64,000 nt of DNA from Mytilus californianus (taxonomy: Eukaryota), in the NCBI RefSeq assembly GCF_021869535.1, contig NW_026262734.1:94426001-94490000 (forward strand), written 5' to 3'. Below are positions 20,101 through 43,723 of the stretch, piece by piece; the first letter of the stretch is position 1, and the number at the start of each line of letters is the position of its first letter. The position numbers and the translations under genes were made by a program. The notes below the pieces were generated by a model. It was not told the DNA's origin, made no database searches, and saw nothing but the letters and a program-made list of their open reading frames with translations.

Positions 20101-23100
20101 TCTACCATGATCATCTATAAAACAAACGTTAGAGAATGATTTAATTTGCAAACGTTGCCAAGAGCATGTTCAGTTGATAATTGATACTTATCCTCTGTAG
20201 ATATTTTTGATAAATCAATTGATTTCCTTATACGATTATTGTATTTGTTATCTTTTTTTTCAGAAGTCACTAGAAAATGTAGATGAAAGAGGTATGTACG
20301 CATTTAATTTGTGATATATAATCATTATATATGATGCATAAGTACATGAAGTTTTTATAATACTGAAATTATCATTCTATTCTAACACAAAACTGGTTAT
20401 CATTTTTTGTTAAAACGGCTACTTAGGTTTGATTGAAAAGTAAATTCAATATTCTTTTAGAATTTCCTTACAAAATTCTTAATTTTGGATACATGTGGTC
20501 ATCTTCCCAAGATATGGTATCTGGTAATTACTGGTCACTTTTAAAAGATATAATAGGGTTTTGTTACTGTTGGTCACCTGATTTAAATATAAGTTTTGGT
20601 TACCTAAGTTTATGCAGATATTGTAATTATCTGGTCATCTTCTGCATATTTCGGATTTGGCTTCCTCTGGTCACCTTATGCAGATAATTGATTTGGTTAC
20701 ATCTGGTCATCTTATTCATACATGGGATTTGGTTACCTCTGGTCACCTTCTGTAGATTTCAGATTTTGTCACCTCTGATCACCTTATGTTGATATGAAAT
20801 ATGGTAACCTCTTGACACACTTACGCAAATAAAATTTGTTTTATTTAGTCTTTTATAACAGAAAATGAAACAATTAATGTTAATATAAATTGCAAAAAAA
20901 TATCAACATTTACATTTGAATGGTTCATGGTTTTATTTCTTTTCATTAGTAGATAATGTTAGACAACCGAAGATCCAGAAAAAAGATGAAGATCAGGTTA
21001 GATATACATTCTTGGTTCAGGGAGAATATGTTATATTGTTATATTAATTTCAATATATTAATAACCATTAAAAAATGTACATTGTCTTTCAGAGTCGTCT
21101 AAAAAACAAATCTTAGAAAACAATTAAAATTTCTTACTTTGTCAAGAGGATTTTTACAATTGATTATGTAGACAATTTATACTTATCATTATTAGATAAT
21201 TTTTGATAAATCAATTGATTTCCTAATACAATCATTATAATTTTTATCTTCTATTTTTAGAAGTCAACAGAAAATGTAGATGAGAGTGGTATGTATGCAT
21301 TTAATCATGATGGATAAGTTCATTAAGTTTTATGATACTGAAACTATCATTCTTTTTGAACTTAAAACTTGTTATTGATATTTGTAAAAATGCTACTTAG
21401 GTTTGATTGAAAAGTAATTTCATTTTCCTGTTGAGATTACTTTACAAAAATATTGAATTGGTTACATGTGGTCAACTTAACAAGATATTGCCAATTTCAT
21501 CAAAATTGAATGGGCAAGATGTGGCGCCATAGTTAAATTTATGAACATTGAAAAAGGTGACAAAAAAGTAGGGAAATTGACCAAAATGAATTATTTTCCT
21601 ATTTTAGAATGATATATTTTTAAATATGAAGCATATAATAGTTTTTGTTATACTTTATATAAAGAAAACAATTGAAGTTTTTAATATACTTCTTCACAGG
21701 GCAGGCTTTGGAGTTGACTGGCTCAACCCCCAACCTAATTTTATTTAGGAGATATTGGGGTAGAAAAATGTCATTTTGTTTCTAAAAATGGTATCATAAT
21801 GATCAAGACATTGATATTATGTAGTTATTTTGTACACAAAATCAATGCAACCACCAGGAATTAATTACCGAAGATAACTAGGATTACATTTTATGATTAA
21901 AGTAATTGTGTTTTGATTGGTTTCTTATCAATTATCCTGAATAATACTCTTATCTCAACAGGTACAAGTGAGACGACGGATTGGAATGAGATTACTTCTT
22001 TTGAGGAGTTTAGGATTGCAAGTATGTACATTATATTTTTTTGATCATTTGCATACCATGATCACCAACAATCTATATTTCACCTCAACAATCATTATAT
22101 TTAGCACTTCATGGATTTGGATATGAATCATTACTTGTTTTATTATTGTCTTTCCAATTACTTTTTATGAATAACAAAGCTAAATGTCCTGTGTGATGAC
22201 TGTACCTTCACATTTTCAGGAATGGCTTTTATCTGTTTAGTAACAACCTATACATATACTAGTTTGATATTTACTTGGTAATTTTATACATTTAGAAGCT
22301 CCCTGTATCATTTATTTTTACATTGTGCCTTAAATAATTCAAGTCATTGATTTCTTTTAATAGGCTAACAAAAACACAATTTTAAGTTTCTCATTAATCT
22401 TATCATAAGGGTTCATGATTATTTTCCAATTTATTTTAAAAAGACATTAGACCTGTGAGAAGTAGACTACAGTCAATGAAAACAAACAAAACGGAGAAAA
22501 GAATGATTTATATGGTGAAGGGAGATGAAATCACGGCCAGAGTCCAGGGACCAGACAGAATGTCAGTTCACCAGATAGGTGATTACTTGACAATAGGGAA
22601 ATCAAATACTACTCAACAAAATCGAAAGGAACTTTCAAGACTAGTCAATTTGATTCCAAAACCAACAAACATAGTGCCACCGATCACATCAGCCTGGTCC
22701 ATGTTAACAAACGGTAAGACTTTAGTGAATACACTTGATTCTCAAAGAAAACAGTTTATGCTGGTTAAAACACATAAATTGATGATCTCGTGTTTTTTTA
22801 AGCATTGATTGATTAGAAGGTAAGGAATGGTGAATGGGTCGAAAGGAACAATCAAACTGAAATTTGGAGAACAAACTGACAAAGCTGAGCAAAAAAATTT
22901 AAAAAAATGATGGAAAGTCAAAAATGCAATCATTATAATTCAATATAGAAAAAATAAAACTGAGCAACATAAACCCCATAAAAAACTAGGGTGGTCTCAG
23001 GTTATCTATATTGGTTAGCAGATCCAGCTTATTATGTGGTGCCCATAATATTGTTCATGCTTGAGTTTATGATCCCTTGGTATATAACTGTATCTTTTGA

Positions 23101-24983: not shown

Positions 24984-27900
24984 TCATTGAAATGGTTTAC
25001 GAATGGATCCTTTCTTTCTGTGCGTAGATTTGAAACTGCCATCATCATTAACTTTACGCCCCCGTTTTTTCAGAACACACTTTCGGCTTACTGAATAGTC
25101 ATGATCAGTTTTTGGACTTTTGGATTTTCTGCTTGGAAACAGCGGTTGCTGCTTTCGCTTTCTTGTTGTTTTGGAAAAGTTGGTTGTCTTACAAATATGT
25201 AATGCCGTTGTGAGTGCTTGACAAATAGCTTTCTTTTTTTTTCACGTCAATTGTCTGGAAATTTTTATTGTTTACATATAAATTGATTTCCTCAATTTTT
25301 CTTTTAATAGCCTGGTCGGTTGTTTCTTTGTCTTCAATTAATTGTTGTTTTGTTTCATCAATTGAGGTAGACTCTATGTCAGGTGATGGAACTACCAGTT
25401 TTGCTACCATCACACAAACACAATGTTTACCATGGCTATTGGCAAAACATGTACATTTGAAAGAGGTCAAATTAACAACTGATACATTTCCCAATCTTGA
25501 CAAAACCTCTACCTGGTTGTTATCTCTGTCATAAAAATATTGTTCTGCATTAAATACATCCATTGCTTCTGATCTGCGCTCTACAGTAAGGTCGATGTTC
25601 CTTTTAGAAGCAATCAATTCAGCTAAATGAACATGCTTACACATTCCTGAAAAATAGTAGAGAATGGAACATAAATAACTTGTACCTTTATGGTTCACTT
25701 TCAATTGTACAAACTTTAAACAAAACCACTAATGAACGTTGAGTAAAGATTTACTTAAATTGGATCGCATTGTTTTAGAAAATTTGATGAGGAAAATGAT
25801 TATTTGCACTTGTATAACCTGATGACGGTTGATAATGCCTTGTTGGAAGACAAAAACAATCAAAACCGAGGAGACTCATAAAACCATAAGACATTTACAA
25901 CAACAGTAAAAAACAATAATAAACAACACGAATTCCATTGAATACCTGAAGTGAAATTAGGTGCTTTAGAAGGATAAGCATTTCCGGGAACCATATACGG
26001 TACCCGAAATTAATAATCTTGATTTCAACAATTCATACTTGATGGTGTACTTTTAAACATTGTTGGACTGACTTAAGATGCTAAAAAAATACCTCTTGTT
26101 GTTGCTGCTGGACAATTGCACACTTCATTGACAATGTCCACATTATAAATCGTCCCAAATGCTGTCTGTGATGGAACAGTGCATTCTGTGGATGAAGTCC
26201 ATTGCACAGTTTGGTCGAGTCCTGCCTTGAGCATATTCTCTGCTGTCAATTTACTTTTGTCTCCCCTTTGTCCTCCCATATTTTTCAGGCGACCAATCTT
26301 TGCGAGTTCATCCAGATAGCTAAAATTACGATGTTTTTTTTAATTTATTTTTGGTTATGAAAACATAATTCAAAGATCTAATAATAAATTATTTCTTAAA
26401 AAATTGAATTCACAGTATTTAATATTCAATGTATTTGCATCTTAAATTAAAATGATCTTTCTAATTTCAGACGATTCAAGTGAACGATAAGAAGAACAGG
26501 ATTGTGACAAATTTAAACTTACTTACTCATAAAACATAGTTACATTTCCATGGAGAAGGAGTAGTAAGTCCTCTACTCTGCTATTGGCATACCCACCAAG
26601 GAAATGGTATTTCATGCCCAGGAAAAACCTGAAAATGACAAAATGTTAAGGACTTTGAATTTATGATTTATATTTGAATGTACAAATAGAAAGTACATAA
26701 AATATTAATGTGTTAACATTTGAATGTTATAAGTAGCATTATATTTTTTTGTTTTAATATCCTCATACACATCAGGTTTTGCTAGACTACATTTTTTCAT
26801 TTTGTCTGCTTTTATGTAATTATCGACTTGCATTGACAATTATGATATTTGTATTAAATTTGCATAACCCTATCATGAAAGAACGGCAAAAATCCTCTCC
26901 ATATAGTTAAAAATTGTAAAGTTTATATCATGCTATGTCTTTGGTTACCCATGAAGAAGTAGGATTTAGACAAAGTGTAATACTTTTTATAAATCAGGTC
27001 ATAAAAACAGAGACAGTTCAGAAAATTTATCCCCAAAATAAAATATACTTAGTTACTATTATCAAACAGATGATAATTAGATGATGCTTAAAATTTCGAT
27101 CTTGTAAAATATAAGGTGTATAGTAATAAAATGTATTAATAACCTTTCAACTAAGTTATTTGTATCTTGATCTTCATGAAAAAAATGTCTTCCATAGTTG
27201 GCCCATCGACATCCCCACTTGTCAGTACACCAGTTGTCTAACAAGTAGTCTGCTATTTGTTTGGAAGGCATCTTCTCTTGCAACATTTTAACTTTTTGAG
27301 AAAAGTCTTCTTTCTAATGAAAAATTATATTGACACATTTCTTTTGAGTATAAAATCAGATTTTATAGATTAAACACGCATGTACTCATAAGCATTGTAT
27401 ATTTATAGGTAAGATCTTTAAATCGCATTAAGCAACTATTTGTACTTTCTAAATTATTTTACTGCTTTAATTCAATAGAGATTCATTTCTATATGTTTCA
27501 GTGGTTTTTTTTTCATCTTTTATCAACCAAAATTCATTGATTGTATTTTTTATTATTATTATTATTGCGTTTTAATTGACTCTATTTGAAAAATCTTGTT
27601 GATATGATTTTGATATTAAAACAATTACAATGTTGGAAAAGGAGAAAAAGATCCCACTGAAGTTTCATTTCTACAGGGATTTTTCTTATAATATAAACAT
27701 ATCAATAACCAATCGTGTTTCATTGTGAGGCAACACACTCGTGATTAATTTTTTAACAATGTTTCACATCCTCTGCATATAAAACTGTTATTATCAGAAG
27801 CAGGTCAAGTTATACTATGTAAATTAACATTCACCTAGTACATATTAAATATTCGAATACATTATTTGAATTTGTCAGGACCAACTCAAAATTATTGACC

Positions 27901-30900
27901 AATTTAAAAATTATTATATTTCACTGTGGTATCATAGGTTCATTATATTTTATTTGTCTTAACTATCACGTTTGATTACCTTGGTACATATTTTCATAGT
28001 TCTAATATAGTCAATAACTTTTTTTCTGGTATGTGCGTGCATGGGTCCTGATACACCAGATTCTTTTTTATTCAAAAATCTGTACACAGCCTGTAAATCA
28101 AATCATTTATATTTAGTTCATGTCTTAAAGATTCTTGATAATAATAATTAAACATTGTCTTGAATATATCATGACTAATTATTTTTCAACAAGATAATAT
28201 TTGATCTATGAAAGTATTAATGCGAAAGAGTCTATTTATTAATTTCAAAACTAACCTCAAGCTTATAAACACAAAAAAAAGATATAAAATGTTAAATCCA
28301 ATGCAATTAATACTTATTGATCCAAAAGAGTGAAACTTCACAGAATAACTCTCATTTAATAACTGATTTTTTTCCCATAAAGAATAAGGTAAAATGTATG
28401 ATACATATATTGAATAATATAATACCTGTAAAACATGAAACCAGCAAAGTAAAACAGAGCTGTTTGGGAATACTTCATTAATTGCGCTGATTTCTTTGGT
28501 ATCTCTGTCTACCATAAAAGATCTAGTAAACAAAATGTAACACTGCAGTATCAACAATCTATATCTTTATCTCATATTGGTTTTATTCTATAATACTATT
28601 TGTTAATTTGTAAATAATTATGTAAATTCTTTTTTTTTTTATATCAATTAGATTTTTAATTTGTGATTAAAAAGTTTGGAAACAAGCCTAAAAAAGCTTT
28701 AATTATTATGTTATGTATAAACCTGACTATGCTTTAATCTTAAATGCTTTGGTTTTAAAGCCTTGCTATAGATCACACTCAAAAGATTTTAAGGAAATTG
28801 ATGTTTTTGTAAGTTTCATTAGTCCATTAGAAAAATATTATTATGCAAAAATTATTTATCTAATATTCTTTGCCAAAATTCAACTGAAATTATTGTGGAC
28901 CTTAATTGTATTAATTTTGATATGCATGAAAAAATGTTTCTTTAGATGAATCTTTCATAGCATTGTCTATTTGTCATTTCAAATAACTATCACTGCACGA
29001 ATATTTGAATAATGTCATAGTTTAACCTGTAATTTTTACAGCCAAATTAATTAAAACATATAATTGAATGGTATTTATTTATCTTTTATATCCATATCAG
29101 ATTTGATGTTGACTCCGAATAATGTTACTAATTGTAAACAAATAATAAGACGAAAATGAAAAGTGTTAATAAGCAATGATATTGAATTCGAAATATTGTC
29201 AACTTTGATACCCACAAACCTTGGACGGAAATCAAATCCATGATTTTCAGCCGTAGTCTTCAGAGATCTCAGAAATATTTTGACAACTTCACCAGTATCA
29301 TCTGACGAGATACAGTACGAAAGAGGAGTGCCTCGGCCTTGCTGTTCATCTCTTGCAACAAGAGCATAGAATGAATAACCATAGGCAGTTAATCCTTAAA
29401 ACAAACAAAAAACATGTTGTAAGTTTATTGTCACACAGTTCAATTCTTTTAAACGTATCAATATTTTAAATTGAAATTTCCATGATTATATACAAGTATA
29501 TACCTTTATATGTAGCATCTAAAAACACCACATTTTCTGCTAGTTTCACCATTCTTTTTCTTTGTGCTTCATTCTGGTAAATAATTACTAATGGCTGTAC
29601 TCCCCTACAATGTAAATGTTACATATTTAATGACCAAAAGTATGAGTATGAATTATATATTTTATGTTGAAATCATGTCCATTTAATGGAAAAGAAGACG
29701 ACAAACTAGCTACATTGTACTCATATTAAATAACCTCTATTAAAACTGAAAAAGACAAAAATGTAAAATATATTGACAAAATATATGACTTGTGAACAAG
29801 TGTAGCACTAAAAACACTCAAAAGGATAAAAACCAAAAATACAAATCATCTATTATGAGAAGTCAGATATACGTTCAGTCTACAGAAAACTCATCTGTAC
29901 AGCTCTCATTGAAACATTTTACAGACAAAATCATATACGAAATTGGACAGACGAGTACTATAAAAACTATTTGAACATAAGGCAATCCAGTCATGTCTGA
30001 AGAACAAAACAGGGTATCAATCAGTAATTTCAGAATTACTCTTTATCAGCATTATGCTTATATCAGTTATTAAAATTTACAAAAGTACATTATTATATAA
30101 GAATAATTACTCTTTCAATTCTTGGTAGAAAATTATCTCTTCCTTCAGTATTTGTGTGCATAGCTCGTGTACAGCTACAGCATCATTCTGGTGAATTATA
30201 AAACAAATGAGGAAATATCATAGATCAATACCAGTACTGACATATACAAAATCAATGTCAACAGTACATCTGTATAATTTGACCAGAAAACACCAAAGTT
30301 AATTTACTGTGTAAAGTGCATGTTTACAATCAGAATGGTAAAAAGATTAAAATGGTGAATAAAGTAATGATTTTAACAGACGAACCATTGGGTTTGCAAA
30401 CAGTGCATCAGTTTAAAGAACCACAAACCAAAGGCTGTATCTATAAATGTGATGGAGGTAACCAACGTCATTTCCAGTGTAAGGTACTAAATACAAAATG
30501 CTCTTTAAATTTCACTTTACTAAAGTATGTAGATGTAACAAGACGGAACCAAGGATATACTTTGTGTAAAGCTATCATTTTTTTTTAAATTGTCCAGATG
30601 TGACCAAAGTTGCGGTGAACAGTGGTAACCAAAGTCAATATATGTGTACGGTTTCAAAAGGGATATAGATTATATACATATCTAAAATAGACATAGGAAA
30701 CACAAGTATGATTAAGGTAGCCCTAGTCAATACCTGTGTATCATTATATATATGTTTCAGGTGACCAAAGTTAACAAAATGGTGAAAAGTTATTATCAAA
30801 TTCTACAAACATTTAAGGGTACAAGTGGCGACCCAGGTCCATATATGTGTTCATTAACCAGAGGTTACCAAAGTCTGTATATGTTAAGTGTTATCAGAGG

Positions 30901-33900
30901 TAGCAAAGTCTTTGTCAATATTAAGATTTGGTTCAAGTTATCAGAGGTAACTGAAGTCCGGATAATGTGTTATTTTTCGATGACTGGATACGTAGAGACA
31001 AATATAAAAAAGAAGATGTGGTTCGATGACTGGATACGTAGAGACAAATATAAAAAAGAAGATATGGTATGATTACCAATGAGACAACTATCCACAAAAG
31101 ACCAAAAATGACACAAACATTAACAACTATAGGTCACCATACGGCCTTCATCAATGAGCCTGTTTCTTTGGATTTTTTAGAAGAACAAAGTAGTAAGTAC
31201 ATATTTTAAGTAAATCTTTTGATTATGTTTTGATACCTTTTATCCATTTTGTAACGTTGACATATATTCTTAATGTCAACTGGTGTCAGATAGTATCTTC
31301 TATCGTGCACATCAAAATGCCCTTGATCTCTAGCCCATTTCCATGCTTTGCACAATATTTCCATGGGTTTTTTCCCCTATTGATAATGAAATAAAATTAA
31401 ATTCGTGTCAATTACAATTAATTTCAAATTTAGTTAAAATCTTTTTGAGCTTAAGGATTTTTTCAAATCAACACAAAATATGTCGTTGTATCAATATATG
31501 TCATTGTAAAAATATATGTCTTCTAGAATATTTTATCATCAATGCTATTCAGCTTTAAACTGGTTTTTTCATTAAAATATTTCATACAAGCGTCCGATAT
31601 TTATGTAAATGCATTAAATGACTCTCTGGCAAGCCAATTTTATCCTAATCATTTTATTTTTGATTTATTTCAACCTATTCATTCATTATAATCTTTGCAA
31701 ATTATGAAAAAATGCGCCGGAAGACAAACACAGACATCGAAAAGAACAGAATGGTTGAGAAAATATTAAACTCCAATAATGTCAGCATACACAATTTTTA
31801 TTATCATTGTGTTTATAAGAGTGCCAGCAACTTATAATTGAAAAATAAGTCAATTCGTTATGAGCAATAAATTATATATAATACCGACGACATGAATACC
31901 TGATCAAGTAAAGCATCTATATAAAGCAGTAAGCTGTGATCTGGGCGTGATTGGTGTTTTTCCTCTTTTATCTGTAAACTGTGTCCATTGTGTTTTAGTT
32001 GTTGCCGAATTATTACTGCTTTTTTACTCAAATGGGTCAAAAATCTGTGTAAGAAGATATTAACATGCCCTTTAATGATTTTTTTTTACATGTACAACGT
32101 CACTGGTTAGTACTGTTTTGCCAAACGTATCATTATTATATTTATTACAACAGCTTGTAAGCAATATTTAAGATCTATCGGACTTGAAGAAAAGGATTAT
32201 TTTTTCTAAAAATATGTGTAAGGCTACTTCGAATAACTGCTATGGTTGTTGTGTTCTCCTTGTAAATTGATAACTTATCATCAAAATGATATATACCAAA
32301 TTCTATATAATTTGATACAGGGATTCTTTATATAATAATTTCAACCATGACAGGGTGTATTGACCCGCTCATCACATGAAATGTCAGGTAAACTAGCCAG
32401 AAACTCATGAATGGTGTATGCCCGGTGAATACCTGTTTAAATGTGTTTGGTTTAGTAATATGATAAATGCATTTAATTCCCACTCTCAAGACACGGACAA
32501 AAGGTTGCTTAACTACAACAAGGATGTTAGGATCAATAAATAATGATGTTCAAACGCTTAAAAGTTATAAATTAATTTATAGTTTTGCATCATAAAAGAA
32601 AAGTAAAAGAGATAAATGAATATTACATTAACATAACATACTGGAATGACACATATGCCTGACAATTATTTGCCCTGGTATTCAAAGGACCTGTTTTTTT
32701 TCCTCTTGGTTTATTACATCTAAAATAAACATGATAAAATTTAAACAAATATGCATCTTAACTTTATAGATAACCAAAGAGAAAAATGTTGTGCAATATT
32801 TCAGAAAATTCATAGTTCAATACGTTTAAAAGCTTTCGGAACTATCTGTTATTAAAGGCCATACTATAATTACTGTATAAACTATAACACAAAACGTATA
32901 TTATTGAAAAAAAGCAAGAGAATAACATACAACCAGAAGTCAAGATTATACAACTCATCTCTTTCAAAACTATACCAATATTATTTTCTGTCACAAATGT
33001 ATCTTTTAACTCAGCATTGTCTTGCAAAGTTGATATGCAAGATATGTAAATAGATTCTTTAAGAATGTTTACGATTGTTACTTAAGTTGTTCTCTTTTTC
33101 TATTTATTGTTTATTTGGAGAAAAACAAGAGTGAATTTATTTCAAGATAAAATTCCTTTATAGATTATCGACTTAGATGATTAAAGTTACCTTTCACACC
33201 TGTATTGCAATGTGGTTTTATTTGCTTTCCTGTGAATAAAATTCCCTGTGATTGTTATATCCATTAAATGCTTGGTTATGACGTCTTCGTTGTCCACTTC
33301 ATTTCTGTTGAATGATAAGCAAAAACTGAAGCCAAAGTCACAAATGCTAGCTGATAAAACACAACAATATGTTTCAGTGTAATAGTGTGACCAAAAATTC
33401 ATCCATATATTCAGAAACATTGGAAAGAGTTACACCATAGTATAATAGACTTAAATTGTCCCCCAAAAAATAGAGTTCTTAAAAATGATCCCTTTGTTAA
33501 TACAGTGATTTTTATATTTTGTAAGACTATTTGAAGTTCAGTAAAATTATTCTGAATAACAAACAGAGTTATTTTTCAATAATCTGAAGGTATATGTTTT
33601 GCTGTGATAGATATTTATTTTCTTTTAATTCTATTGAAACCATTAGGTCATAGGAAGAAGGTAGCATATAGAAATTAGTTGATTTCAAAACTATATATTT
33701 TCGATTAAAATAAAATTTCCCATACCTTAAACGTCTAACAATGCAATCAGTACCATTTTTCCGTTTTTTGATGAAGGTGGATCTCACAAACTCTACGAAT
33801 GGCATATCTAGGGTAAGAAAAGCATATGTATTGCTATGTAGTAACACTAGTTTACTTGTTATAAATTTAAAAACAAATGATGACATCGATGAAAAATACC

Positions 33901-36900
33901 AACAAACGACCTCTGCACAATAAAATTAACGGTACCAATTTTCTTGCACCAGATGCGCATTTCGACAATACATGTCTCTTCAGTGATGCTCGTTGCCAAA
34001 TTATTTGAAATCCAAAGCTTATATAAAAGATGAAGAGCTATAATCCAAAAGGTCCAAAAAGTATAGCCAAATCCGTGAAAGAAATCAGAGCTTTGCATGA
34101 GGGAGATACATTCCTTAATTTATAATAATTTCTAATATTTTGTAACAGCAAATTTTAATAACACAAAAAAATAGTTGCATATAATATATTTGAACGTTTC
34201 AACAGGCGCAAACCTGCACATTACACGTAAAACAGCAGTAAAACATTAAAAGAAAAGACGCACTATAAAAGCAAATAATGGAAAATGGCTTAACTCTGAC
34301 AAAACAATTAACGAGTTACAAAAAATACAATTATAAACACAGTATTAATACAATAATAAAACGCATTTGCAGTATAACATAGACGTTACAGTTAATAATA
34401 AAAAAGGAGGACACATGATACAACTATTGCGACAAAATGACGTTAGATAAACCACTTTAAATTTCGCATGTAAAGTCAAATTTAAGTATAATAATTTTGT
34501 CGTTGGAAGTACGGAGAAATGGAAATAAAATGTGTTTTAAATGCATTGTTGACTTTCGAAAAGCCTTCGATAAAGTCATGCTCATTGGTAGTATCTATAA
34601 ACTGCAACTTTATAATACAACTAATTATTTTTTATAGAATATTGACGTCTATGTATACTAATGGTAGGTTATGTATAAAAGTGGATGATAAAATGACTTT
34701 TACTTTTTATAATAAAATTGAGAATAAAAATGGGGAATGTGTCAAAGAGACAACAACCCGACCGTAGAAAAATACAACAGCAGAAGTTCACCAACAGGTC
34801 TTCAATGTAGCGAGAAATTCCTGCTAATTATAAGTTATTCAAATCATTTTAAAATCACTGATGATAAGTATGGCTAGTGAACATTTCCGAAGGAACAATA
34901 TTGTACCTTCAACATCATGTGTCATGTTATAGTTGCTGAGTTCTTCGTTGCACACATCAACAGGAATAAAAAGGTTATCATCATTTGTTGCATGCTTATC
35001 ATTCGTGTGGTGATCAAGTTTGCCACTGTCACCTAAAATTTGTTGTATAAACGTTACAATTAACAAAAAAACGTAATAATTTATAATTAATACTAGTTTA
35101 TCTGTTAAAATAAAGCTTTTTTGCATCTGAATGTATTTGCCAATTAGAAAAACTTTGCCTCTAATGCTGATTGATATCAATGCAGTAATTATGCAATCAA
35201 ATTATGTAAAGTAAACTTATATAAATATCACATTTACAATACTTCCTTTAATATTTTTCTTTTTCAAAAACAGTCTACAGTGAAAAAACGTAAAACGATT
35301 TAAGGTAGATCATTACTGAATTTTTTTCTCAGACATAATTTTCTTATACATAGCCACAATTTAGTAGAAAATCAAAAGAAAAAGGGTGAAAATAAATCTC
35401 GTTTTCTTGCGAAAAATGGAAATTTCATTATCATTCCTTTAAAGAAAATTCACCAAATAAGTTATCTTCCGTTAATTAGCTCAGTTGACAAATTGAATCA
35501 AACAAAGACTGATAGCCGGTTTTTACAATAACACTTATTTTTTCAATGATATAATGCACTTATTTACATTTATCAAACAAGAGTTTTAAAAATGAATAGC
35601 ATTTATGTCTCAAAATTTGCAGTTTTAAATAAAGAACTTTGTCGCTTGTGTGCTGCTATTTTACAATTCAAGATGGCGATATACAGATATATAGTGATGA
35701 TCTACCTAATTCAAAGATATAAGGCTTAAAAATGTGTTCCGTCTACGTAAGACTCATTAGGGTCGCTCCTATCGAAAATGTGAAAATGCCTAATGAAGAA
35801 CAAAGTTAAAGTAAACTTATTTCATTTCGTTTTGCCAAAAACAATTTGATAAAATATCAAATATATAAATATGGACATTTTACTGATTCTATGGTATTTA
35901 TCCCTTTCTGAGCACAATATTGATCAACATTTTACCAAACGTGGGTCATTTGATCGAAGTCCTTCCTTAGTCGAAATATAATAATGACGACAAATATTTT
36001 GCTTTCCTCTGAATTTTATATAATGACGTCATTGGAATAGGTGATCATGCCCGATGAAGTCAGACAAGAAGAGCATGACTTTTTGTAAATAATCTAAACA
36101 AATTATCAAATTTTATTGGAATCATTAGATTAACAGATTCCACAACTATATCTCGTGTTATAAGATATTTCCCAACTATCAACCGTAGACATTATTTTTT
36201 TAACATAGATTTACATATGCGTTACTTTAAACTATAACTGTAAAGGTATCTCTTTATGAGAGATAATCATAAATTATATAATTTCTATTATCAGTTACCT
36301 TTTGGCTGGAGTGACTGGTAGTGGTTTTCGAAAATGTGCCCAAGAAGAATAGGATTACCGGAAAAACCATCACAACCAGTTACCCAAAGGACACTATCCT
36401 CATTATTGGTACTGGGAGCACTGGTGACAATAATTATGTCTCTCTGTAGCATTCTGGACATTCCAATGACCACAACATGGTCTGCGTACTCTCCATTCTG
36501 TAACATCCTGTCACAGTAGTCCGGAAAATTGTCTTCAACGAAGTTTTCTAATAACACAATGCCTTGACTGCCCTATTGATTGAAAGAAAGCTACTTACAT
36601 AAGTCTTTATTAACTACTGTACATTGAAATTGATTAATACAAAACAAATACTTTTATAACTACATTTTATCAAAAATCATCATGATCATAACATACATTT
36701 TTTATTTATTTTATTGTTTTTTGTCAATACCTATTATTTAGCATTGTACTATATTAACTGTAAATGATTTATTTAAACATCTGCAGAAAAAAGCATTCTG
36801 GTTGATATGAAAGTCTTAACTGATGCTTATTCTTTTATCAGTTTGTAAATCTTTAAATATTAAATTGCATTAATCACAGGTATTACGGGCAGTTACGTCA

Positions 36901-39146
36901 ATTCCAAATTAATATTCTGTCGGAAGTAGTTTTGATGGTATTTGTGTGTTAATAGCTTCTTAACTGATTTAAATCATATATTTAAGTTGTGCTGATGCGC
37001 CACTAACGTTGCCAACGGTTCTGATTTGTCCCCTGAAAACATGTCCAACTAATTCTTTATGTTTCTGTCCATGGAGGAGTTTGATAATTAGTGAATGTAT
37101 TTAACAAGTTAATTAGTTTACCTCAAAACTAGGATGTGTTGATATGTAGTTTACAACATTTGTTCTTAATTGTTCGGGAGCAATAACGTCTGCGCCAATT
37201 CTATCTAGCTGGCATGTGATTGCTTCAAAAAAACAATTCCCATTCCCTGGTGTTTGACCTCTGTATTCTAAGCCATGGGATGAACAGTTCCTCTTAAGTC
37301 TCTCAACTATTAATGTTTGTTCCTCGTTTGAAGCTATGGATTGCTTTATAGCAATTTGTAGTTCATCAGGTGTTTGGAATGATTTCCCTTAATATTAGAA
37401 TATAAGGTTAAAATTTCTTCACTTCAAATTTACAGCTAAATGACATTGTTTATACATACTTATGTGTATTCAATTGTAATAAAACGTATCATTGAAAATA
37501 TTACTTGTTTATTCAGGGATCATTTGACAGATTTGTTAAGAGTGATATGATTCTGGGTAAACTCTGAATTTTACAATAAAATTTGAATTATGATTCTTTC
37601 ATTTCTTTGTGAGGTTGTTGACATTCACCTCTTTAGAATTATAAATTAACTTTTTCAGACCTTCTGCTCTGAAATATTTGTATCACAGAAGTCTGACATT
37701 TTTGGCTATTCATAAATTTATTCAAAAACAATATTTGACTTTGTTATTCATGATTATTGAAAGCTATGATAATATGCTGGTGGTTGACTGGTTTTGTGTA
37801 AATTATTTTGTTTTGAATTAAACAAATAAAATGAAGATACAGAGCCAAAAACATTCTAAAATTTGAATGATGGCAGCAGCTAGATGCATGTAATTGGTAT
37901 TGACATTTTGTTTTAGAAAATGTGTGTGTAGGTGTGTATGTGTGTTGGTGTGTTGGTGTGTGTATGTGTGTTGGTGTGTTGGTGTGTATGTGGGTGTGCT
38001 GGTATGTGTGTGTGGGGAGGTAAAAATTTGATATGAATCCTTTCTTTTTACTAATAAAGGGCATCATAAGAAAATTGAAATAAAACACTGATCAGTATTA
38101 AGTGAACTGCCAAAGTGTGTTATGTACACTAGTTTTTAGATAATAAACAAATGATAAAGTAAGGAATAAACCGCAAACCAATTCCGTGGAATGATGTTTG
38201 TCTTGTTCCCGATTTTGTGTTTATTGTCGTGGCTTTGTCAATTTGGTTATGACAAGTGGATTTGATTAAGTGCCTTTTGAATTTTCTGTTTTTCAGTTTC
38301 CAATTTGCGTGCCAACAGATATATTCAACTACAAAAGTCTACAGTATTAACATAAAAATAACACTACTGTGTTATAAATGTATATCTATAATATAATACA
38401 GATAAAGAAATAAATCACCTGATGCTAAGCATATCTTTTCTTTCATCTCATTTGCTTTTTCTGTTAAGGTTTGTGCGTGGCGAAGAATATACTGTTTTGA
38501 ATTTGTATCACATGCTAAAATGGTAGGGAAATATAATATTTGTGCGTGTAATTTCCTAGAATAAATCATATTTTTTCAATTTGCATATGTACACAAAAAA
38601 ACAAAAACAGTAACAATTTTCGATTTGTTGGAATAAGATACTAATTTTGAAACACTTTTAAAAAAAATATATACGCAGTCGCTGAGCCATTACAAATTGG
38701 CCAAGGATAATTGATCGTAGCTGAATAAAGTTTTAAAAAATGAAGAGCATATTATCCATGCCATCGGTCGTTGTAAAATATTTAGCATAAAAGGTCAATC
38801 CGTGGTAAAATCAGTATAAATTCAAGCCTAAATGAATTATTTCTCAATTGTATGATCTAAACAGCGTAATCTATACAATACTGTATGAAAAATATCACGA
38901 CATTTGTGGCGGTTTGGGCATAAATGAGAAAACACAATTCATACCCAATTCTCTGGCTTTTTTCTCCAAAGAGGTTGCCTCAATATATATGGCTTCAATC
39001 TGTTTTTTAACTTCTTCCTTTTCTTCATGTCGCAATTCATGGAGGTCTTCCAAATTAAAGTTTTCCAAACCTGTAAGATATGGAAATGGCGGAATAAATA
39101 ACGATGTTTCAAATATACACCGCGATAATGTATCATAATTTGACAT
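24984..39146 (-). CDS. OTU-domain-fused MULE transposase (UIM-like, OTU, WRKY/GCM1-like Zn, DDE, SWIM, SWIM-like), 19 exons, ~1,084 aa if two 1-nt lesions are corrected
   Basis: Exons (minus): 39146-38945, 38514-38419, 37387-37122, 36572-36299, 35032-34907, 33807-33726, 33304-33191, 32719-32642, 32044-31900, 31376-31237, 30197-30111, 29604-29504, 29394-29220, 28522-28426, 28090-27980, 27313-27144, 26628-26527, 26319-26093, 25646-25189 (or to 24984 with one A fewer in an A9 run). All intron phases match. All introns are GT-AG except the acceptor at 30198-30199, which reads AT. Motifs: PGNGNCFFEA...HYQS (OTU); YRCERC...C...HNGH; FLDATYK, FMVDRD, CWFH, TNNLVE (MULE); CNC-x8-CKH (SWIM). The ATG at 39146 may be preceded by an unseen upstream exon. 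Confidence 0.88.
25189..26319 (-). CDS. Tandem SWIM and SWIM-like Zn fingers, C-terminal exons of the transposase
   Basis: YNVDIVNEVCNCPAATTRGMCKH spans the 26093/25646 junction. It is followed by VVNLTSFKCTCFANSHGKHCVC. Confidence 0.85.
27144..29604 (-). CDS. MULE transposase DDE catalytic core exons
   Basis: VVFLDATYKGLTAYGYSFYALVARDEQQGRGTPLSYCI (D at 29517-29519); SFMVDRDTKEISAINEVFPNSSVLLCWFHVLQA (D at 28507-28509, CxxH); NW...WANYGR...DTNNLVER (E at 27146-27148). Confidence 0.93.
30595..30960 (-). repeat. Degenerate 36-bp minisatellite, reverse orientation, in a transposase intron
   Basis: gtgaccaaagtt, gtggtaaccaaag, ggtgaccaaagttaac and taaccagaggttaccaaag are reverse-complement variants of the core. 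Confidence 0.6.
31900..33304 (-). CDS. WRKY/GCM1 (FAR1-like) Zn DNA-binding domain exons of the transposase
   Basis: Exons 33304-33191, 32719-32642 and 32044-31900 splice to QYRCERCNKPRGKKTGPLNTRANNCQAYVSFQFLTHLSKKAVIIRQQLKHNGH. This is the C..C..H..H pattern typical upstream of MULE catalytic domains. Confidence 0.7.
33895..34170 (-). mobile_element. Short hammerhead-bearing interspersed repeat (retrozyme or PLE pLTR derivative) inserted in a transposase intron
   Basis: An ~280-bp segment around the ribozyme, unrelated to the flanking exon or minisatellite sequence. Boundaries are approximate. Confidence 0.5.
33946..33989 (-). ncRNA. Minimal type I hammerhead ribozyme (Penelope/retrozyme-type), intact core
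   Basis: Minus strand reads gcatca CTGAAGA gac atgtatt gtc GAA ATGCGCAT C tggtgc. It has a CUGANGA core, 3-bp stem II, GAAA, palindromic stem III (AUGCGCAU), AUC cleavage triplet and a 6-bp stem I (gcatca/tggtgc). Confidence 0.8.
35300..35709. mobile_element. MITE with short TIRs (Kolobok-like, TTAA context) in a transposase intron
   Basis: ttaaggtagatcat at 35300-35313 and atgatctacctaa at 35697-35709 are reverse complements apart from one base. Confidence 0.5.
36299..37387 (-). CDS. OTU-like cysteine protease (deubiquitinase) domain exons of the transposase gene, preceded by a UIM-like motif
   Basis: Exon 37387-37122 encodes KSFQTPDELQIAIKQSIASNEEQ...GQTPGNGNCFFEAITCQL...EQLRTNVVNYI (Cys codon 37233-37235). 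Exon 36572-36299 encodes ...DRMLQNGEYADHVVV...LLGHIFENHYQSL (His codon 36321-36323). The junction is phase 0. Confidence 0.88.
37920..38013. repeat. Compound (TG)n/(TGTTGGTG)n microsatellite
   Basis: Visible TG-rich low-complexity tract. Confidence 0.9.
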
Positions 39147-39759
39147 TCCTTAACTATAATTTTGGAATTTGTGCAGTTTTTCTAGTTTTTGAAGTATTTG
39201 ATTTGTACTATCAACCCTACGTTTCGAATTCTGATTTTAGGAATTGAATATTGGTCTTAATATGACCTCTACTATGATTAATGAAATAATTATGTTTGAA
39301 ACTGTAACCATTACCTTCAAAATCGCCTGTTACACCTGTCATATTTCCTCTATTTAATTCACGAACAAAAAACCCTGTAATGAGAATGTGAAATATATCA
39401 TATTTATTTTTAAAATGTCAACAAAATCTTTTTTTTTATTAATTGTATATAACCGGAGAAACCATGAGACCCCTTAAAAGTCATATAATTATATATAGGA
39501 TGAACAGATTTAACCAAAATGAATTGCAGTTCAGGGTAATAAGAGGTTGCCTAAGACATTATTTGCGTCAGATTACCAAAAGTAAATAAATTATAGGATG
39601 GGTATCCAGAGATATCCATAATCATTATCTGTTTATGATGAGCAATATTCATATTCAATATAAATGTTGCGGGAAGTGTTAACCAAATTTAACATCTGGA
39701 TAGTGTGAAACGAGATAATCGATGCCAATAAAGATTCATTAATTATGAATTGTGACCAG

Positions 39760-42700
39760 AACCTAAAGTTAATACCTGTGTATGGTGACCAAAGGTAACC
39801 ACATTCCAAATCTGTAAAGGGTGACCAGAGGTAATTTAAGTAAATATATGTATACGATGACCGGAGGTAATCTCATTCAATAATATGAAAGGGTTACCCA
39901 ATTCGAAATCTGTGTAGGGGGGCCAGAGGTAAACATATTTAATATCTGTGTAGAATGACCTGAGTTAACCACATTCAATACCATATTCAAAGTTTTGGTT
40001 GGGTGACCAGAGGTCACCCTATTCAATATCTTTGTAGGGTGACCAGAGGTAACCATATTCAATATCTTTGGAGGGTGACCAGAGGTAACCATATTTAAAG
40101 TTTTGGTTGGGTGACCAGAAGTAACCTTGTTCAATATATGTGTAGGGTGACCAGAGGTAACCATATTCAAAGTTTTGGTTGGGTGACCAGAGGTAACCTT
40201 ATTCAATATCTGTGTAGGGTGACCAGAGGTAACCATATTCAAAGTTTTGGTTGGGTGACCAGAGGTCACCCTATTCAATATCTTTGTAGGGTGACCAGAG
40301 GTAACCATATTCAATATCTTTGGAGGGTGACCAGAGGTAACCACATTCATCATCTTGGCAGTGTGACCAGAGATTACCAAAATAAACAGCTTACTAGTAG
40401 ATTTAATAAAGGTATCTACATTCAATATTTATGTATGGTGTCTAAAGATAAATAACTTTATATCTGTGTATGGCGACCCGAGGTTACCACATTCAAAAAA
40501 GGCAATTGCTATATATATATATGTGTGTGTTGACAATGGCAACATAATTCAATGTATGTGTACAGCGACCAGAAGTTGCTATATTAATTATAAAAGAAGC
40601 GCAAAAGTGTGAACCGGGATAACAGATGCTAACCAAATACATTATTTATGAATTGTAACCATAGGTAACATAAGCCAATTTATTGTAGGTTGACCAGAGG
40701 TTACCATGTTCAATATCTGTGAAGAGTAACAAGAGATAACCATACTCAATATTTTGTAGGGTGACCAGAAGTAACCACATTCAATATCTTTTTAGATGAC
40801 AAAAAAAAACCATATCCAATATCTTTGTTAGGTGACCAGAGGTAACCATATTCAAAGTTTTGGTAAGGTGACCAGAGGTTACCATGTTCAAAATATGTGT
40901 AGGGTGACCAGAGGTAACCATAGTCAATATATGTGTAGGGAGACCAGAGGTTACCACATATAATATCTTTTTAGGTGACCAAAGATAACCATATGCAATA
41001 TCTTTGTAAAGTGACCAGAGGTAACCTTATTCAATATTTGTGTAGGGTGACCAGAGGTAACCATATTTAAAGTTCTGGTTGGGTGACCAGAAGTAACCTT
41101 ATTCAATATATGTGTAGGGTGACCAGAGGTAACCATATTCAAAGTTTTGGTTGGGTGACCAGAGGTAACCTTATTCAATATCTGTGTAGGGTGACCAGAG
41201 GTTACCATATTCAAAGTTTTGGTTGGGTGACCAGAGGTCACCCTATTCAATATCTTAGTAGGGTGACCAGAGGTAACCATATTCAAAGTTTTGGTTTATT
41301 GAACAGAAATAACCTTATTCAATATATGTGTAGGGTGACCAGAGGTAACCATATTCAAAGTTTTGGTTGGGTGACCAGAGGTAACCATATTCAATATCTT
41401 TGGAGGGTGACCAGAGGTAACCACATTCATCATCTTGGCAGTGTGACCAGAGATTACCAAAATAAACAGCTTACTAGTAGGTTTAATAAAGGTATCTACA
41501 TTCAATATTTAAGTATGGTGTCTAAAGATAAATAACTTTATATCTGTGTATGGCGACCCGAGGTTACCACATTCAAAAAAGGCAATTGCTATATATATAT
41601 GTGTGTGTTGACAATGGCAATATAATTCAATGTATGTGTACAGCGACCAGAAGTTGCTATATTAATTATAAAAGTAGCGCAAAAGTGTGAACCGGGATAA
41701 CAGATGCTAACCAAATTCATTATTTATGAATTGTAACCATAGGTAATATAAGCCAATTTATTGTAGGTTGACCAGAGGTAACCATTTTCAATATCTGTAA
41801 TTGTTTACCAGAGGTTACCTTTTTCAATATTTGTGTACGTTGATCAGAGGTTACCACGTTCAATTTATGACCGAAGTTTACAAAATTAAATATTTAAGTA
41901 GGCTAACTATAGGTAACCAAATTAAATATTTATGCACGGTGACTAGAGGTAATCAAGTTTTCTATCTGTGTAAGATAAGAGGTAACCACATTCAAAATAT
42001 GTGAAGGGTGACCAGAGGTAACCCAATTCAGTATTTGTGTAGGGTAATTTGAGGTATTTAAAGTTCATATATGTATAGGGTGACCAGAGGTCACCAAATT
42101 CAATATTTTAGTAATTTATGTATGATTAATCATATTAAAACTCTTGCACAGTCATCAGTACATTTTCATTATTACCGGACTTAAGAAAGAACTCACACGA
42201 TGGGAGCGTTCAAGACATGATTAAGAAGATTCCTGTTGTTCCTTACTTTTTTAATGTTGTTGTAAATTTCTTTTGATATATCTGTTTACTCCTTGGTTTT
42301 GATTGTATTTGTCTTAGTAGGGTGACCAGAGATTACCAAAATCAAGACATATTTAGGGTAACAAGAGGTAGTTAAAGCCAGTATATAGGTTTTGAAACCG
42401 AACATAACTCAATTAAAAGTATTTGAAAGATGTCCAGATATAACCGTGATCATTATCTGTGTAGGATGGCAAGTTTATAACTAATTCAAACATCTGTGTT
42501 GGGTGACCAGAGGTTTCCATATTCAGTATATGTGAAGGGTGACCAGAGGTAACCATATGCAATATCTTTGTAAAATGACTAGAGGTAACCTGATTCAATA
42601 TATGTGTAGGGTGACCAGAAAGAACCATATTCAAAATTTTGGTAGGGTGACCAGAGGTCACCATATTCAATATCTTTGTAGGGTGCCCAGAGGTAACCAT

Positions 42701-43240
42701 ATTCAACATCATTGTAGAGTGATTAGGGTTAACCATATACAACATCTTGGTAGGGTGTCCATATATTACCAAATTAAACATCTAAGTAGGGTTATTAAAG
42801 TTAAATAAATTCAATAGTTATGCACAGTGTCTAAAGATAAAAAATAGAATATATGTGTAGGGTGACCAGAGGTCACCACAATTAATTATGTAAAAGGTGA
42901 CAAGGTGCAACAAAATTCAATATCTGTGAAGGCTTGCCGGGTTGACAAGAGGTAACCAAATTCAATATCTTATAATGTTTATTGCAATTCAATACATGTG
43001 TTGGGTGACCAGAGGTCACCACAATTAATTATGTAAAAGGTGACAAGATGTATAGAAATTCAATATCTGTTTAAGGGCCATTCAATATCTATATCTGTGT
43101 CAATTAATTAGAAGAACCACTGTAAATTTATCTGCAAAGGAAGTAAGGTTAATAAAGTTACTATGCATTTTGTATCAAATGACCAGTGTAACTATATGCA
43201 CTATTATTTTCTGTATAGGGTGACCAGAGGTAACCAATGG
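39760..43240 (-). repeat. Long 36-bp minisatellite array, reverse orientation, upstream of the transposase gene; includes an internal direct duplication with 1,080-bp offset
   Basis: Many gggtgaccagaggtaaccatattcaa units. The block aataaacagcttactagtag occurs at 40381 and 41461. Confidence 0.92.
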
Positions 43241-43723
43241 CAGTTTAAAGGTACCCGAGTTCGAGGCATACCATCTTTTTAGTTATATTTCATGAGAGTG
43301 CAATATAGGCCATTAGGTTATTTTTTTTTTTCTGAAAAATAAGCCATATCACTCGTTAATAGAGTTACAGATGAATCTTCTATGCATTTTCAATTGTTTG
43401 TTTTGAGTGAATCATTATGATTATTGATTATTTGTGTATTATTTTTAACTTTTTGTACCTCTCTCAACAGTATCCTTTGAAATATGGTGATTCCAGAACT
43501 TTGCATTAAGCTCATATCCGTATTGTATAACAGCAATTATAACCTGAGTATGCTGCACTGAGTATCCCCTTAGTAACGTACTTTCACTTTAAACCGGAAA
43601 TCATGTACTATTTTTTGTCGCGTATGGACTCAATTTTAACCGTTTCTGTTCAGGTGACCAGTGGGCACCGTTCAGCGTAACTATTATCCTTGTGACATGT
43701 CGATATATTTTATCTAACTCTAG

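What the first reader, a model, noticed from the sequence alone, without database searches (positions are those of the whole stretch)
33726..39146. OTU deubiquitinase plus UIM-like motif fused in frame to the N-terminus of a MULE transposase
Phase-consistent GT-AG exons link the OTU exons (catalytic Cys in GNGNC, His in HYQS) through linker exons 35032-34907 and 33807-33726 to the Zn-binding and DDE exons with no stop. Just before the OTU is DELQIAIKQSIASNEE, which fits the UIM pattern (acidic-L-x-x-A-hydrophobic-x-x-S). A ubiquitin-binding motif next to a DUB on a cut-and-paste transposase suggests it edits ubiquitin at its own target chromatin or on itself (inference).
Basis: partly seen in the sequence, partly recalled or inferred. 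Interest (0 to 1): 0.85.

Follow-up and report, generated by a model that had tools for sequence, protein, structure and literature searches.

The report
Mussel Mutator transposase carrying a deubiquitinase
This is one slightly damaged copy of a multi-copy Mutator-type jumping gene of the California mussel whose 20-exon transposase gene begins with an OTU ubiquitin-cleaving domain picked up from a host gene. That is a real but not unprecedented kind of fusion.

Summary
The core observation holds. On the minus strand a 20-exon gene (39342-25189) reads open for 1000 codons.

- **Splicing:** Spliced contigs from two Mytilus species carry exactly the predicted joints.
- **Locus:** The window is Mytilus californianus, scaffold JAKFGE010000008.1.
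- **Intact copy:** A sister copy on the same scaffold has all 20 exons with GT-AG borders and a 1068-aa frame. RefSeq annotates 994 aa of it as one protein with both OTU and MULE above Pfam thresholds.
- **Mobility:** Four copies share an exact 5' end (window 43694) with unrelated flanks, so this is a mobile MULE family.

- The ATG at 39146 is intronic.
- This copy has a ruined exon-11 acceptor and an A9/A8 frameshift, so RefSeq splits it into two genes.
- The UIM-like motif fits the consensus and is conserved, but fails the Pfam UIM model.

The UIM-like motif plus OTU is a two-exon cassette homologous to a host GTPase-OTU gene. OTU-MULE fusions are already reported in Medicago and Hydra, so I class this as a new variant with moderate interest. 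Deubiquitinase activity and its role in transposition are untested.

The parts
43240..43694 (-). 5' terminal unique region of the transposon. The exact terminus is 43694; read on the minus strand it begins CACAAGGATAATAG.
   Evidence: Four copies (window, L001, L002, L007) start at the same base and have unrelated flanks.
39803..43240 (-). Subterminal arrays of a 36-bp repeat with core GGTTACCTCTGGTCACC, in minus orientation.
39315..39342 (-). Exon 1, carrying the start codon (MTGVTGDFE).
   Evidence: Contig X3 record 19 has 86 nt upstream of exon 2.
38945..39070 (-). Exon 2.
38419..38514 (-). Exon 3.
   Evidence: Joints 38945|38514 and 38419|37387.
37122..37387 (-). Exon 4: the UIM-like helix (37367-37320) and the first half of the OTU domain, with the catalytic Cys135 codon at 37235-37233.
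36299..36572 (-). Exon 5: the second half of the OTU domain, with His256 in ENHYQS (36329-36312).
34907..35032 (-). Exon 6, a linker.
   Evidence: Joints 36299|35032 and 34907|33807.
33726..33807 (-). Exon 7, a linker with a basic stretch (KKRK).
31900..33304 (-). Exons 8-10 (33304-33191, 32719-32642, 32044-31900): the Cys/His-rich putative DNA-binding zinc finger.
   Evidence: No Pfam hit.
31237..31376 (-). Exon 11.
30111..30199 (-). Exon 12 (30197-30111), whose acceptor at 30199-30198 is AT here and AG in L001, L002 and L007. A cryptic acceptor at 30189-30188 leads to a stop at 30177-30175.
26527..29604 (-). Exons 13-18: the MULE DDE catalytic core. It holds D550 (FLDATYK, 29525-29505), D618 (MVDRD, 28515-28501), CWFH (28446-28435) and E738 (NNLVER, 27160-26628).
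25189..26319 (-). Exons 19-20: a SWIM-like CxCx9CxH motif across the intron (26120-25633) and a second Cys/His cluster (25455-25414). An A9 run at 25241-25233 shifts the frame. In the A8 form the frame runs on to 24987.
8000..21000 (+). Arrays of the same 36-bp repeat in the opposite orientation, including an 803-bp higher-order repeat at about 10.2-17.5 kb. They are shared with copy L007 at least down to 14950.

Best explanation
The finding lies inside one copy of a multi-copy, very long (over 28 kb) Mutator-like (MULE) DNA transposon of Mytilus californianus.

**The gene.** Its single long gene has 20 exons and encodes 1068 aa in intact copies. The domains, in order, are:
- a short helical N-terminus;
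- a UIM-like helix;
- an OTU cysteine-protease (deubiquitinase) domain;
- a linker;
- a Cys/His zinc-finger DNA-binding region;
- the MULE DDE catalytic core with its CxxH motif;
- a SWIM-like finger and a basic tail.

**Origin of the OTU part.** The UIM-like motif plus OTU is a two-exon, phase-symmetric cassette. It is homologous to the C-terminal module of a host 'nuclear GTPase SLIP-GC-like' gene and to a bivalve-expanded OTU family. The most likely history is capture of host exons by the transposon at the DNA level (inferred).

**Shown here:** the fusion transcript, the intact frame in a sister copy, mobility (identical ends, different flanks), and stronger conservation of exons than of introns between copies.

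**Inferred (about 40-50%):** the OTU domain is an active deubiquitinase that helps transposition. It could keep the transposase from ubiquitin-dependent turnover, or remove ubiquitin marks at the excision or integration site. This would parallel the Ulp1 and OTU domains of other transposons.

**This copy.** The window's copy is probably non-autonomous. A G-to-T change destroys the exon-12 acceptor, which gives a 500-aa OTU plus zinc-finger product, and a 1-nt homopolymer insertion removes the C-terminal tail.
For: - **OTU domain:** Pfam OTU and MULE both hit.
- **Splicing:** Spliced contigs from two species carry six exact GT-AG joints and run on 424-506 nt past exon 8.
- **Open frame:** The 20-exon chain is open for 1000 codons.
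- **Intact copy:** L007 has a 1068-aa frame, and RefSeq XP_052075386.1 (994 aa) has OTU 37.4 and MULE 45.9 bits in one protein. An M. edulis gene model also joins OTU to MULE.
- **Mobility:** The same 5' terminus occurs with four unrelated flanks. About 15 related RefSeq models lie on at least 6 scaffolds.
- **Constraint:** Mismatch rates are lower in exons than in introns: 0.31% against 1.45% (p=2e-8) for L002, and 1.4% against 4.9% (p=2e-5) for the OTU exons of L004.
- **Host origin:** The cassette is 48% identical over 183 aa to the host gene, with the same intron position and phases.
Against: - No enzymatic or transposition data exist.
- The residue three before the catalytic Cys is Asn here. 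It is Asp in OTUD5 and in most family members.
- Runs X1-X3 are only guessed to be RNA. The one certified RNA run gave only about three reads on an OTU exon.
- I could not read the contig sequences beyond exon 8, so their reach into the DDE exons is inferred from their lengths.
- RefSeq also has OTU-only models (371-382 aa) from other copies.
- Nonsynonymous to synonymous counts between copies (6:3, 7:1) are too small to show protein-level selection.
- No terminal inverted repeat, left end or target-site duplication was found.
Confidence: 0.8

Rival explanations
1. The OTU domain acts as a self-processing protease. It would cut the long translation product into separate OTU, DNA-binding and catalytic pieces, rather than act on ubiquitinated substrates.
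For: Babu et al. 2006 proposed this for MULE transposases of Medicago that are fused to an OTU-superfamily protease (PMC1702500). A roughly 100-aa low-complexity linker separates the OTU domain from the zinc finger.
Against: The closest solved relatives are true deubiquitinases (OTUD5, OTUD3, OTUD1). The module comes from a host OTU family found in many non-polyprotein contexts. I saw no Gly-Gly-like cleavage motif in the linker by eye, and I did not test this formally.
Confidence: 0.1
2. The OTU cassette is a passenger. It would be a Pack-MULE-like capture of host exons that happens to be spliced in frame and contributes nothing to transposition.
For: The cassette is clearly of host origin and keeps the host's intron. 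MULEs are known for capturing gene fragments (PMC6446971 abstract). A divergent family member (L003) shows no OTU within 10 kb upstream of its exon-8 homologue.
Against: The catalytic Cys and His and the fold are intact. OTU exons diverge 3.5 times less than their introns between the M. californianus and M. coruscus copies. The cassette is kept in frame in every full copy examined. Other transposon superfamilies have recruited OTU or Ulp1 independently (P0113, an OTU plus hAT protein).
Confidence: 0.2
3. Two separate products are the biologically relevant ones: an OTU-only accessory protein (about 371-500 aa) and a separate transposase, as annotated for this locus. On this view the long fusion is a rare read-through.
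For: RefSeq annotates this locus as LOC127713098 (500 aa) plus LOC127713103 (385 aa). It annotates other copies as OTU-only models of 371-382 aa.
Against: Each split has a visible lesion in the copy concerned: the AT acceptor here, a 1-nt deletion in exon 11 of L001, and a frameshift in exon 9 of P0167. The lesion-free copy is annotated as one 994-aa protein. The spliced contigs pass exon 8 without intron retention.
Confidence: 0.1

Closest known systems
MuDR-6_HM of Hydra (Repbase), listed with an 'Ovarian Tumour Gene' feature in Dupeyron et al. 2019 (PMC6446971)
   Same: It is an animal Mutator-superfamily element associated with an OTU domain.
   Different: Only a table entry is available. 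The position of the OTU, its origin and its expression are not described. No close sequence relative outside Mytilus was found here.
Medicago truncatula MULE transposases with a C-terminal OTU-superfamily protease (Babu et al. 2006, PMC1702500)
   Same: A WRKY-GCM1/MULE/SWIM transposase is fused in one protein to an OTU-superfamily papain-like protease.
   Different: There the protease is C-terminal and the host is a plant. Here it is N-terminal, preceded by a UIM-like helix, in a bivalve, and traceable to a host two-exon module.
Ginger1 transposons and animal Helitrons/Helentrons with OTU domains; Mutator elements with Ulp1 (Bao et al. 2010, PMC2836005; PMC6431247)
   Same: A transposon-encoded protein carries a ubiquitin- or SUMO-specific cysteine protease, proposed to aid transposition through ubiquitin-pathway control.
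   Different: The transposase superfamilies differ (integrase-like, or rolling-circle Rep/Hel), or the protease is Ulp1 rather than OTU.
Human OTUD5 (DUBA), OTUD3 and OTUD1 deubiquitinases
   Same: These are the best structural and profile matches. The Cys and His boxes align. From my own knowledge, OTUD1 and OTUD5 also pair an OTU domain with a UIM.
   Different: Identity is about 20%. In the human proteins the UIM is C-terminal (my own knowledge). The Asp at Cys-3 is Asn here.
Mytilus californianus 'nuclear GTPase SLIP-GC-like' (XP_052090922.1, P0017)
   Same: It is 48% identical over 183 aa, covering exactly the UIM-like motif plus OTU. It has the same intron position and the same exon phases.
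   Different: The host protein has dynamin-like GTPase domains upstream and no transposase.

Membership tests
OTU deubiquitinase (Pfam PF02338) | Profile match above the curated threshold | tested here: met
   37.6-37.7 bits against a cutoff of 23.3 on P0177 and P0001. The window exons alone score 14.8 and 21.5 bits on consecutive profile segments.
OTU deubiquitinase (Pfam PF02338) | OTU fold | tested here: met
   The AlphaFold model has pLDDT 92.7 and pTM 0.84. Foldseek finds OTUD3 (E 3.9e-10, TM by target 0.82), OTUD5, OTUD1 and viral OTUs.
OTU deubiquitinase (Pfam PF02338) | Catalytic Cys and His in the conserved boxes | tested here: met
   The family profile matches OTUD5 at E 5e-14. GNC aligns with the Cys box and HYxS with the His box. 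Both are near-invariant in 26 homologues.
OTU deubiquitinase (Pfam PF02338) | Acidic third residue (Asp three before the Cys in OTUD5-type enzymes) | tested here: inconclusive
   The residue is Asn here and in several homologues, and Asp in most. Whether Asn can serve is not decided by sequence.
OTU deubiquitinase (Pfam PF02338) | Cleaves ubiquitin or ubiquitin-like conjugates | not testable with these tools
   This needs an enzyme assay.
Ubiquitin-interacting motif (Pfam PF02809) | Profile match | tested here: not met
   The UIM model gave no hit at E up to 10 on the motif peptide or on the equivalent peptides of four homologues.
Ubiquitin-interacting motif (Pfam PF02809) | Acidic, hydrophobic-x-x-Ala-x-x-x-Ser, acidic pattern on a single helix | tested here: met
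   DELQIAIKQSIASNEE matches. Shuffles give the pattern in 0.7% of cases. It lies in predicted helix 15-45 of the model. The core AIKQS(I/L)A is conserved in host P0017.
Mutator-like (MULE) transposase | MULE catalytic domain above the Pfam threshold, with D, D, CxxH and E motifs | tested here: met
   PF10551 scores 29.3 bits on one window exon and 45.9 bits over profile positions 1-98 of 99 on P0181. The motifs are located.
Mutator-like (MULE) transposase | SWIM zinc finger (PF04434) | tested here: inconclusive
   A CxCx9CxH pattern is present across an intron. Pfam SWIM did not hit P0155 or P0181. UniRef names relatives 'SWIM-type domain-containing'.
Mutator-like (MULE) transposase | Terminal inverted repeats and a 9-11 bp target-site duplication | tested here: inconclusive
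   The 5' end is mapped exactly. No inverted copy of it and no duplicated flank lies in the window. Inverted 36-bp arrays flank the gene. The other end is not reached by any locus.
Mutator-like (MULE) transposase | Several copies at different genomic sites | tested here: met
   Four copies have the same terminus and unrelated flanks. RefSeq models lie on at least 6 scaffolds.

The most novel reading that the evidence does not exclude
A still-active giant MULE of mussels captured a host immune-type UIM-plus-OTU cassette and depends on its deubiquitinase activity. The activity would either stabilise the transposase or erase ubiquitin marks at its DNA breaks. On this reading, several bivalve transposon superfamilies (MULE, hAT, possibly Sola1) have independently recruited the same host OTU family as a counter-defence. 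The same element may also carry a Ulp1 (SUMO) protease gene.
Probability: 0.2. Interest if true: 0.7.

Novelty: new variant of a known kind. Interest (0 to 1): 0.42.

Why it matters
Cysteine proteases of the ubiquitin and SUMO systems turn up repeatedly in transposon proteins: Ulp1 in MULEs, and OTU in Ginger1, Helentrons and some MULEs. No experiment reported in the papers I searched says what they do there.

This Mytilus family offers a clean test case:
- It has an intact 1068-aa copy.
- Naturally truncated copies make OTU plus DNA-binding products without the catalytic core.
- A clear host donor gene is available for comparison.
- The domain folds confidently.

A Cys-to-Ala mutant in an excision assay, plus a di-ubiquitin panel, would answer whether the deubiquitinase serves transposition.

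For annotation, the result shows that about 15 'uncharacterized' M. californianus RefSeq genes are pieces of one transposon family.

Tried and rejected
- **Terminal inverted repeat.** I searched the window for an inverted copy of the 5' terminal sequence (27-mer and 14-mer with up to 3 mismatches, and an 800-nt blastn at word size 7). Nothing turned up outside the arrays.
- **Target-site duplication.** I searched for a copy of the 11 bases next to the terminus. There was none.
- **Other end via L002.** An assembly gap (a run of N) starts right after the matching part of L002. I left it alone.
- **UIM by profile.** The Pfam UIM model was negative on this protein and on four homologues.
- **Zinc finger and SWIM by profile.** Pfam gave no hits on single exons. 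Its SWIM model (PF04434) did not hit the 994-aa protein either.
- **Relatives outside Mytilus.** The word-index search found only Mytilus fragments. The ESM Atlas neighbours are generic MULE/SWIM clusters without OTU.
- **Age of the fusion.** The divergent paralogue L003 has an exon-8 homologue but no OTU within 10 kb upstream. That copy also lacks exons 9-15, so it decides nothing.
- **dN/dS between copies.** There are too few substitutions.
- **True RNA run X21.** It gave about three reads on one OTU exon at 6% sampling. Its heavy coverage at 34550-34949 belongs to an unrelated short repeat in an intron.
- **Domesticated single-copy gene.** I rejected this reading because several near-identical copies keep the terminus and the arrays at different sites.
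Full report
**What is in the window.** The window has about 30% G+C and no N. The finding lies on the minus strand. Pfam on single open stretches gave the following:
- OTU (PF02338) split over two neighbouring exons: 37388-37116 on profile positions 1-41 (14.8 bits) and 36572-36294 on positions 45-90 (21.5 bits).
- MULE (PF10551) on 28566-28420, at 29.3 bits against a cutoff of 27.6.

**Splicing evidence.** I laid four public runs on 33150-39149.
- A 1315-nt contig of run X3 (organism B) and an 857-nt contig of run X2 (organism A) carry these joints: 38419|37387, 37122|36572, 36299|35032, 34907|33807 and 33726|33304.
- Other contigs carry 38945|38514.
- Every joint is CT..AC on the plus strand, which is GT..AG for a minus-strand gene.
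- Both contigs stop matching at 33191 without entering the intron, and run on for 424 and 506 nt. That length would take them through the next three or four exons. This is inferred from lengths, because I could not read the contig sequences.
- The runs are only guessed to be RNA, but contigs lacking six introns can only be RNA or a processed copy.
- The one certified RNA run, sampled at about 6%, gave only about three reads, on one OTU exon.

**Gene model.** The first coding exon is 39342-39315 (MTGVTGDFE), as in RefSeq XP_052097435.1. Guided by fragmentary Mytilus gene models, I assembled 20 exons from 39342 to 25189. They give a 3003-nt frame without a stop, and every border is AG/GT except one acceptor. 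In order, the protein has:
- a helical N-terminus;
- DELQIAIKQSIASNEE (residues 91-106);
- OTU with Cys135 and His256;
- a roughly 100-aa linker;
- a Cys/His-rich region (YRCERC...NNCQAY...KHNGH);
- the MULE core (D550, D618, CWFH, E738);
- a CxCx9CxH SWIM-like motif split by an intron;
- a second Cys/His cluster.

**Identity of the locus and state of this copy.** Locus L006 of M. californianus GCA_021869535.1 (JAKFGE010000008.1, about 94.44 Mb) is 100% identical to window 38515-15189. RefSeq splits this copy into two genes:
- LOC127713098 (P0177, 500 aa) holds OTU, linker and zinc finger, and ends KMDKRMML.
- LOC127713103 (P0155, 385 aa) runs from MVDRD to the end.

The cause is visible. The acceptor of exon 12 is AT here (30199-30198) but AG in three other copies. 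The next AG (30189-30188) shifts the frame to a stop at 30177-30175. Skipping this 87-nt exon would keep the frame, and one M. edulis model does so. A second lesion is an A9 run at 25241-25233 (A8 in L001 and L007), which replaces the conserved 81-aa basic tail by 14 residues.

**The fusion is real in intact copies.** Locus L007, on the same scaffold at 60.48 Mb, has all 20 exons with AG/GT borders and a 1068-aa frame. RefSeq annotates 994 aa of it as one protein (XP_052075386.1, P0181). On that protein Pfam gives OTU 37.4 bits, MULE 45.9 bits and ZSWIM1-3 RNaseH-like 38.8 bits, all above threshold. An independent M. edulis model (P0151) also joins the OTU exon, the linker and MULE.

**It is a transposon.**
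- The window, L001, L002 (M. edulis) and L007 all begin at the same base (window 43694; CACAAGGATAATAG... on the minus strand) with unrelated flanks.
- Between this terminus and exon 1 lie arrays of a 36-bp repeat. The same repeat in the opposite orientation fills 8-21 kb on the other side of the gene and is shared with L007.
- The RefSeq clusters hold about 15 M. californianus models on at least 6 scaffolds. Relatives occur in M. edulis, M. trossulus, M. galloprovincialis and M. coruscus.
- I could not find the other terminus, an inverted copy of the 5' end, or a target-site duplication.

**The OTU domain.**
- An AlphaFold model of residues 76-272, built with 25 homologues, has pLDDT 92.7.
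- Foldseek places it with OTUD3, OTUD5, OTUD1 and viral OTUs at probability 1.0.
- A family profile hits OTUD5 at 5e-14, with the Cys and His boxes aligned.
- The residue three before the Cys is Asn rather than the usual Asp.
- Between copies, exons differ less than introns. For the M. edulis copy the rates are 0.31% against 1.45% (p=2e-8). For the OTU exons of a truncated M. coruscus copy they are 1.4% against 4.9% (p=2e-5).
- Synonymous and nonsynonymous counts are too few to interpret.

**Origin of the OTU.** A full-library search with the second OTU exon found 213 relatives.
- The nearest are bivalve proteins in which this OTU is combined with kinase, Roc-COR, NACHT-LRR, death-effector, HEPN and glycosyltransferase domains.
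- One hit (P0113) combines OTU with a hAT transposase.
- The M. californianus 'nuclear GTPase SLIP-GC-like' protein is 48% identical over 183 aa, from the UIM-like motif to the end of OTU. This is exactly the span of the two OTU exons.
- Its gene has the intron at the same position, with the same phases at all three borders.
- The cassette is phase 1-1, so it can be inserted without breaking a frame.
- Capture of host exons by the transposon is the simplest reading (inferred).

**The UIM-like motif.** It fits the hydrophobic-x-x-Ala-x-x-x-Ser pattern with acidic flanks. It arises in 0.7% of shuffles and starts a long, confidently predicted helix. Its core is conserved in the host paralogue, and similar motifs sit 43-48 residues before the Cys in three other homologues. 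Pfam's UIM model reports nothing for any of them. I rate it plausible but unproven.

**Comparison with the literature.**
- Babu et al. 2006 noted Medicago MULE transposases with a C-terminal OTU-superfamily protease and suggested polyprotein processing.
- Dupeyron et al. 2019 list Hydra MuDR-6_HM with an 'Ovarian Tumour Gene'.
- Bao et al. 2010 describe OTU or Ulp1 at the C-terminus of Ginger1 transposases, OTU in animal Helitrons and Ulp1 in Mutator elements. They propose a role of the ubiquitin pathway in transposition.
- Searches for OTU with MULE or Mutator in bivalves found nothing.

The kind is therefore known. The N-terminal position, the UIM-like helix, the traceable host donor and the 20-exon structure make this a new variant.

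**Earlier notes of this scan.** Another first-stage note on this window reads the whole 1190-43240 stretch as a giant MULE with both Ulp1 and OTU (s1-330625). I found only a weak Peptidase_C48 signal on the plus strand at 5553-5723 (12 bits, E 0.19), plus an HW motif at 4456-4587. A second note reports a Sola1 transposase with an OTU-like domain elsewhere in this genome (s1-318127). I did not test it.

**Verdict.** The fusion interpretation is supported for the family and broken in this copy. The UIM is plausible, and the proposed function is untested. Interest is moderate.

Noticed in passing
window 4456-4587 and 5553-5723, plus strand: Two open stretches carry Ulp1-like motifs (CHWVAVV, and PLQNDFSSCGVYCLK). 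Pfam Peptidase_C48 scores only 12 bits (E 0.19) on the second. This may be a second, convergent protease gene of the same element.
   Followed up: partly
window 10249-17523: About ten copies of an 803-bp higher-order repeat, each containing a block of the 36-bp subterminal repeat. The repeat is shared with sister copy L007.
   Followed up: partly
window 34711-34821 (intron between exons 6 and 7): A short segment has very high depth in every run, and 583 of the 586 X21 reads laid on the 6-kb stretch match it only in part. It is a highly expressed or very abundant short repeat unrelated to the gene.
   Followed up: no
window 35789-35793 against L001 13555-14867: The sister copy L001 has about 1.3 kb of extra sequence in the intron after the OTU exons, and another 0.4 kb near window 31600. 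These are insertions or deletions between copies.
   Followed up: no
window 30400-31100 (intron between exons 11 and 12): Two more minus-orientation copies of the 36-bp repeat core and a 46-bp tandem duplication (30976-31068) lie inside an intron. This may be a nested fragment of a related element.
   Followed up: no
P0113 (Logan contig, 948 aa): A protein with an N-terminal OTU of the same family, followed by DUF4371 and a hAT dimerisation domain. A hAT transposase has therefore also acquired this OTU. The organism is not recorded.
   Followed up: partly
L004 (M. coruscus CACVKT020009597.1) 10001-15187: A truncated copy keeps exons 1-5 (OTU) at about 91-94% DNA identity and then diverges just before exon 6. 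Its gene model (P0014) splices the OTU exon to unrelated sequence.
   Followed up: partly
window 37921-38014: An imperfect (TG/CA)n-rich microsatellite in intron 3. The reads tool skipped it as a repeat.
   Followed up: no
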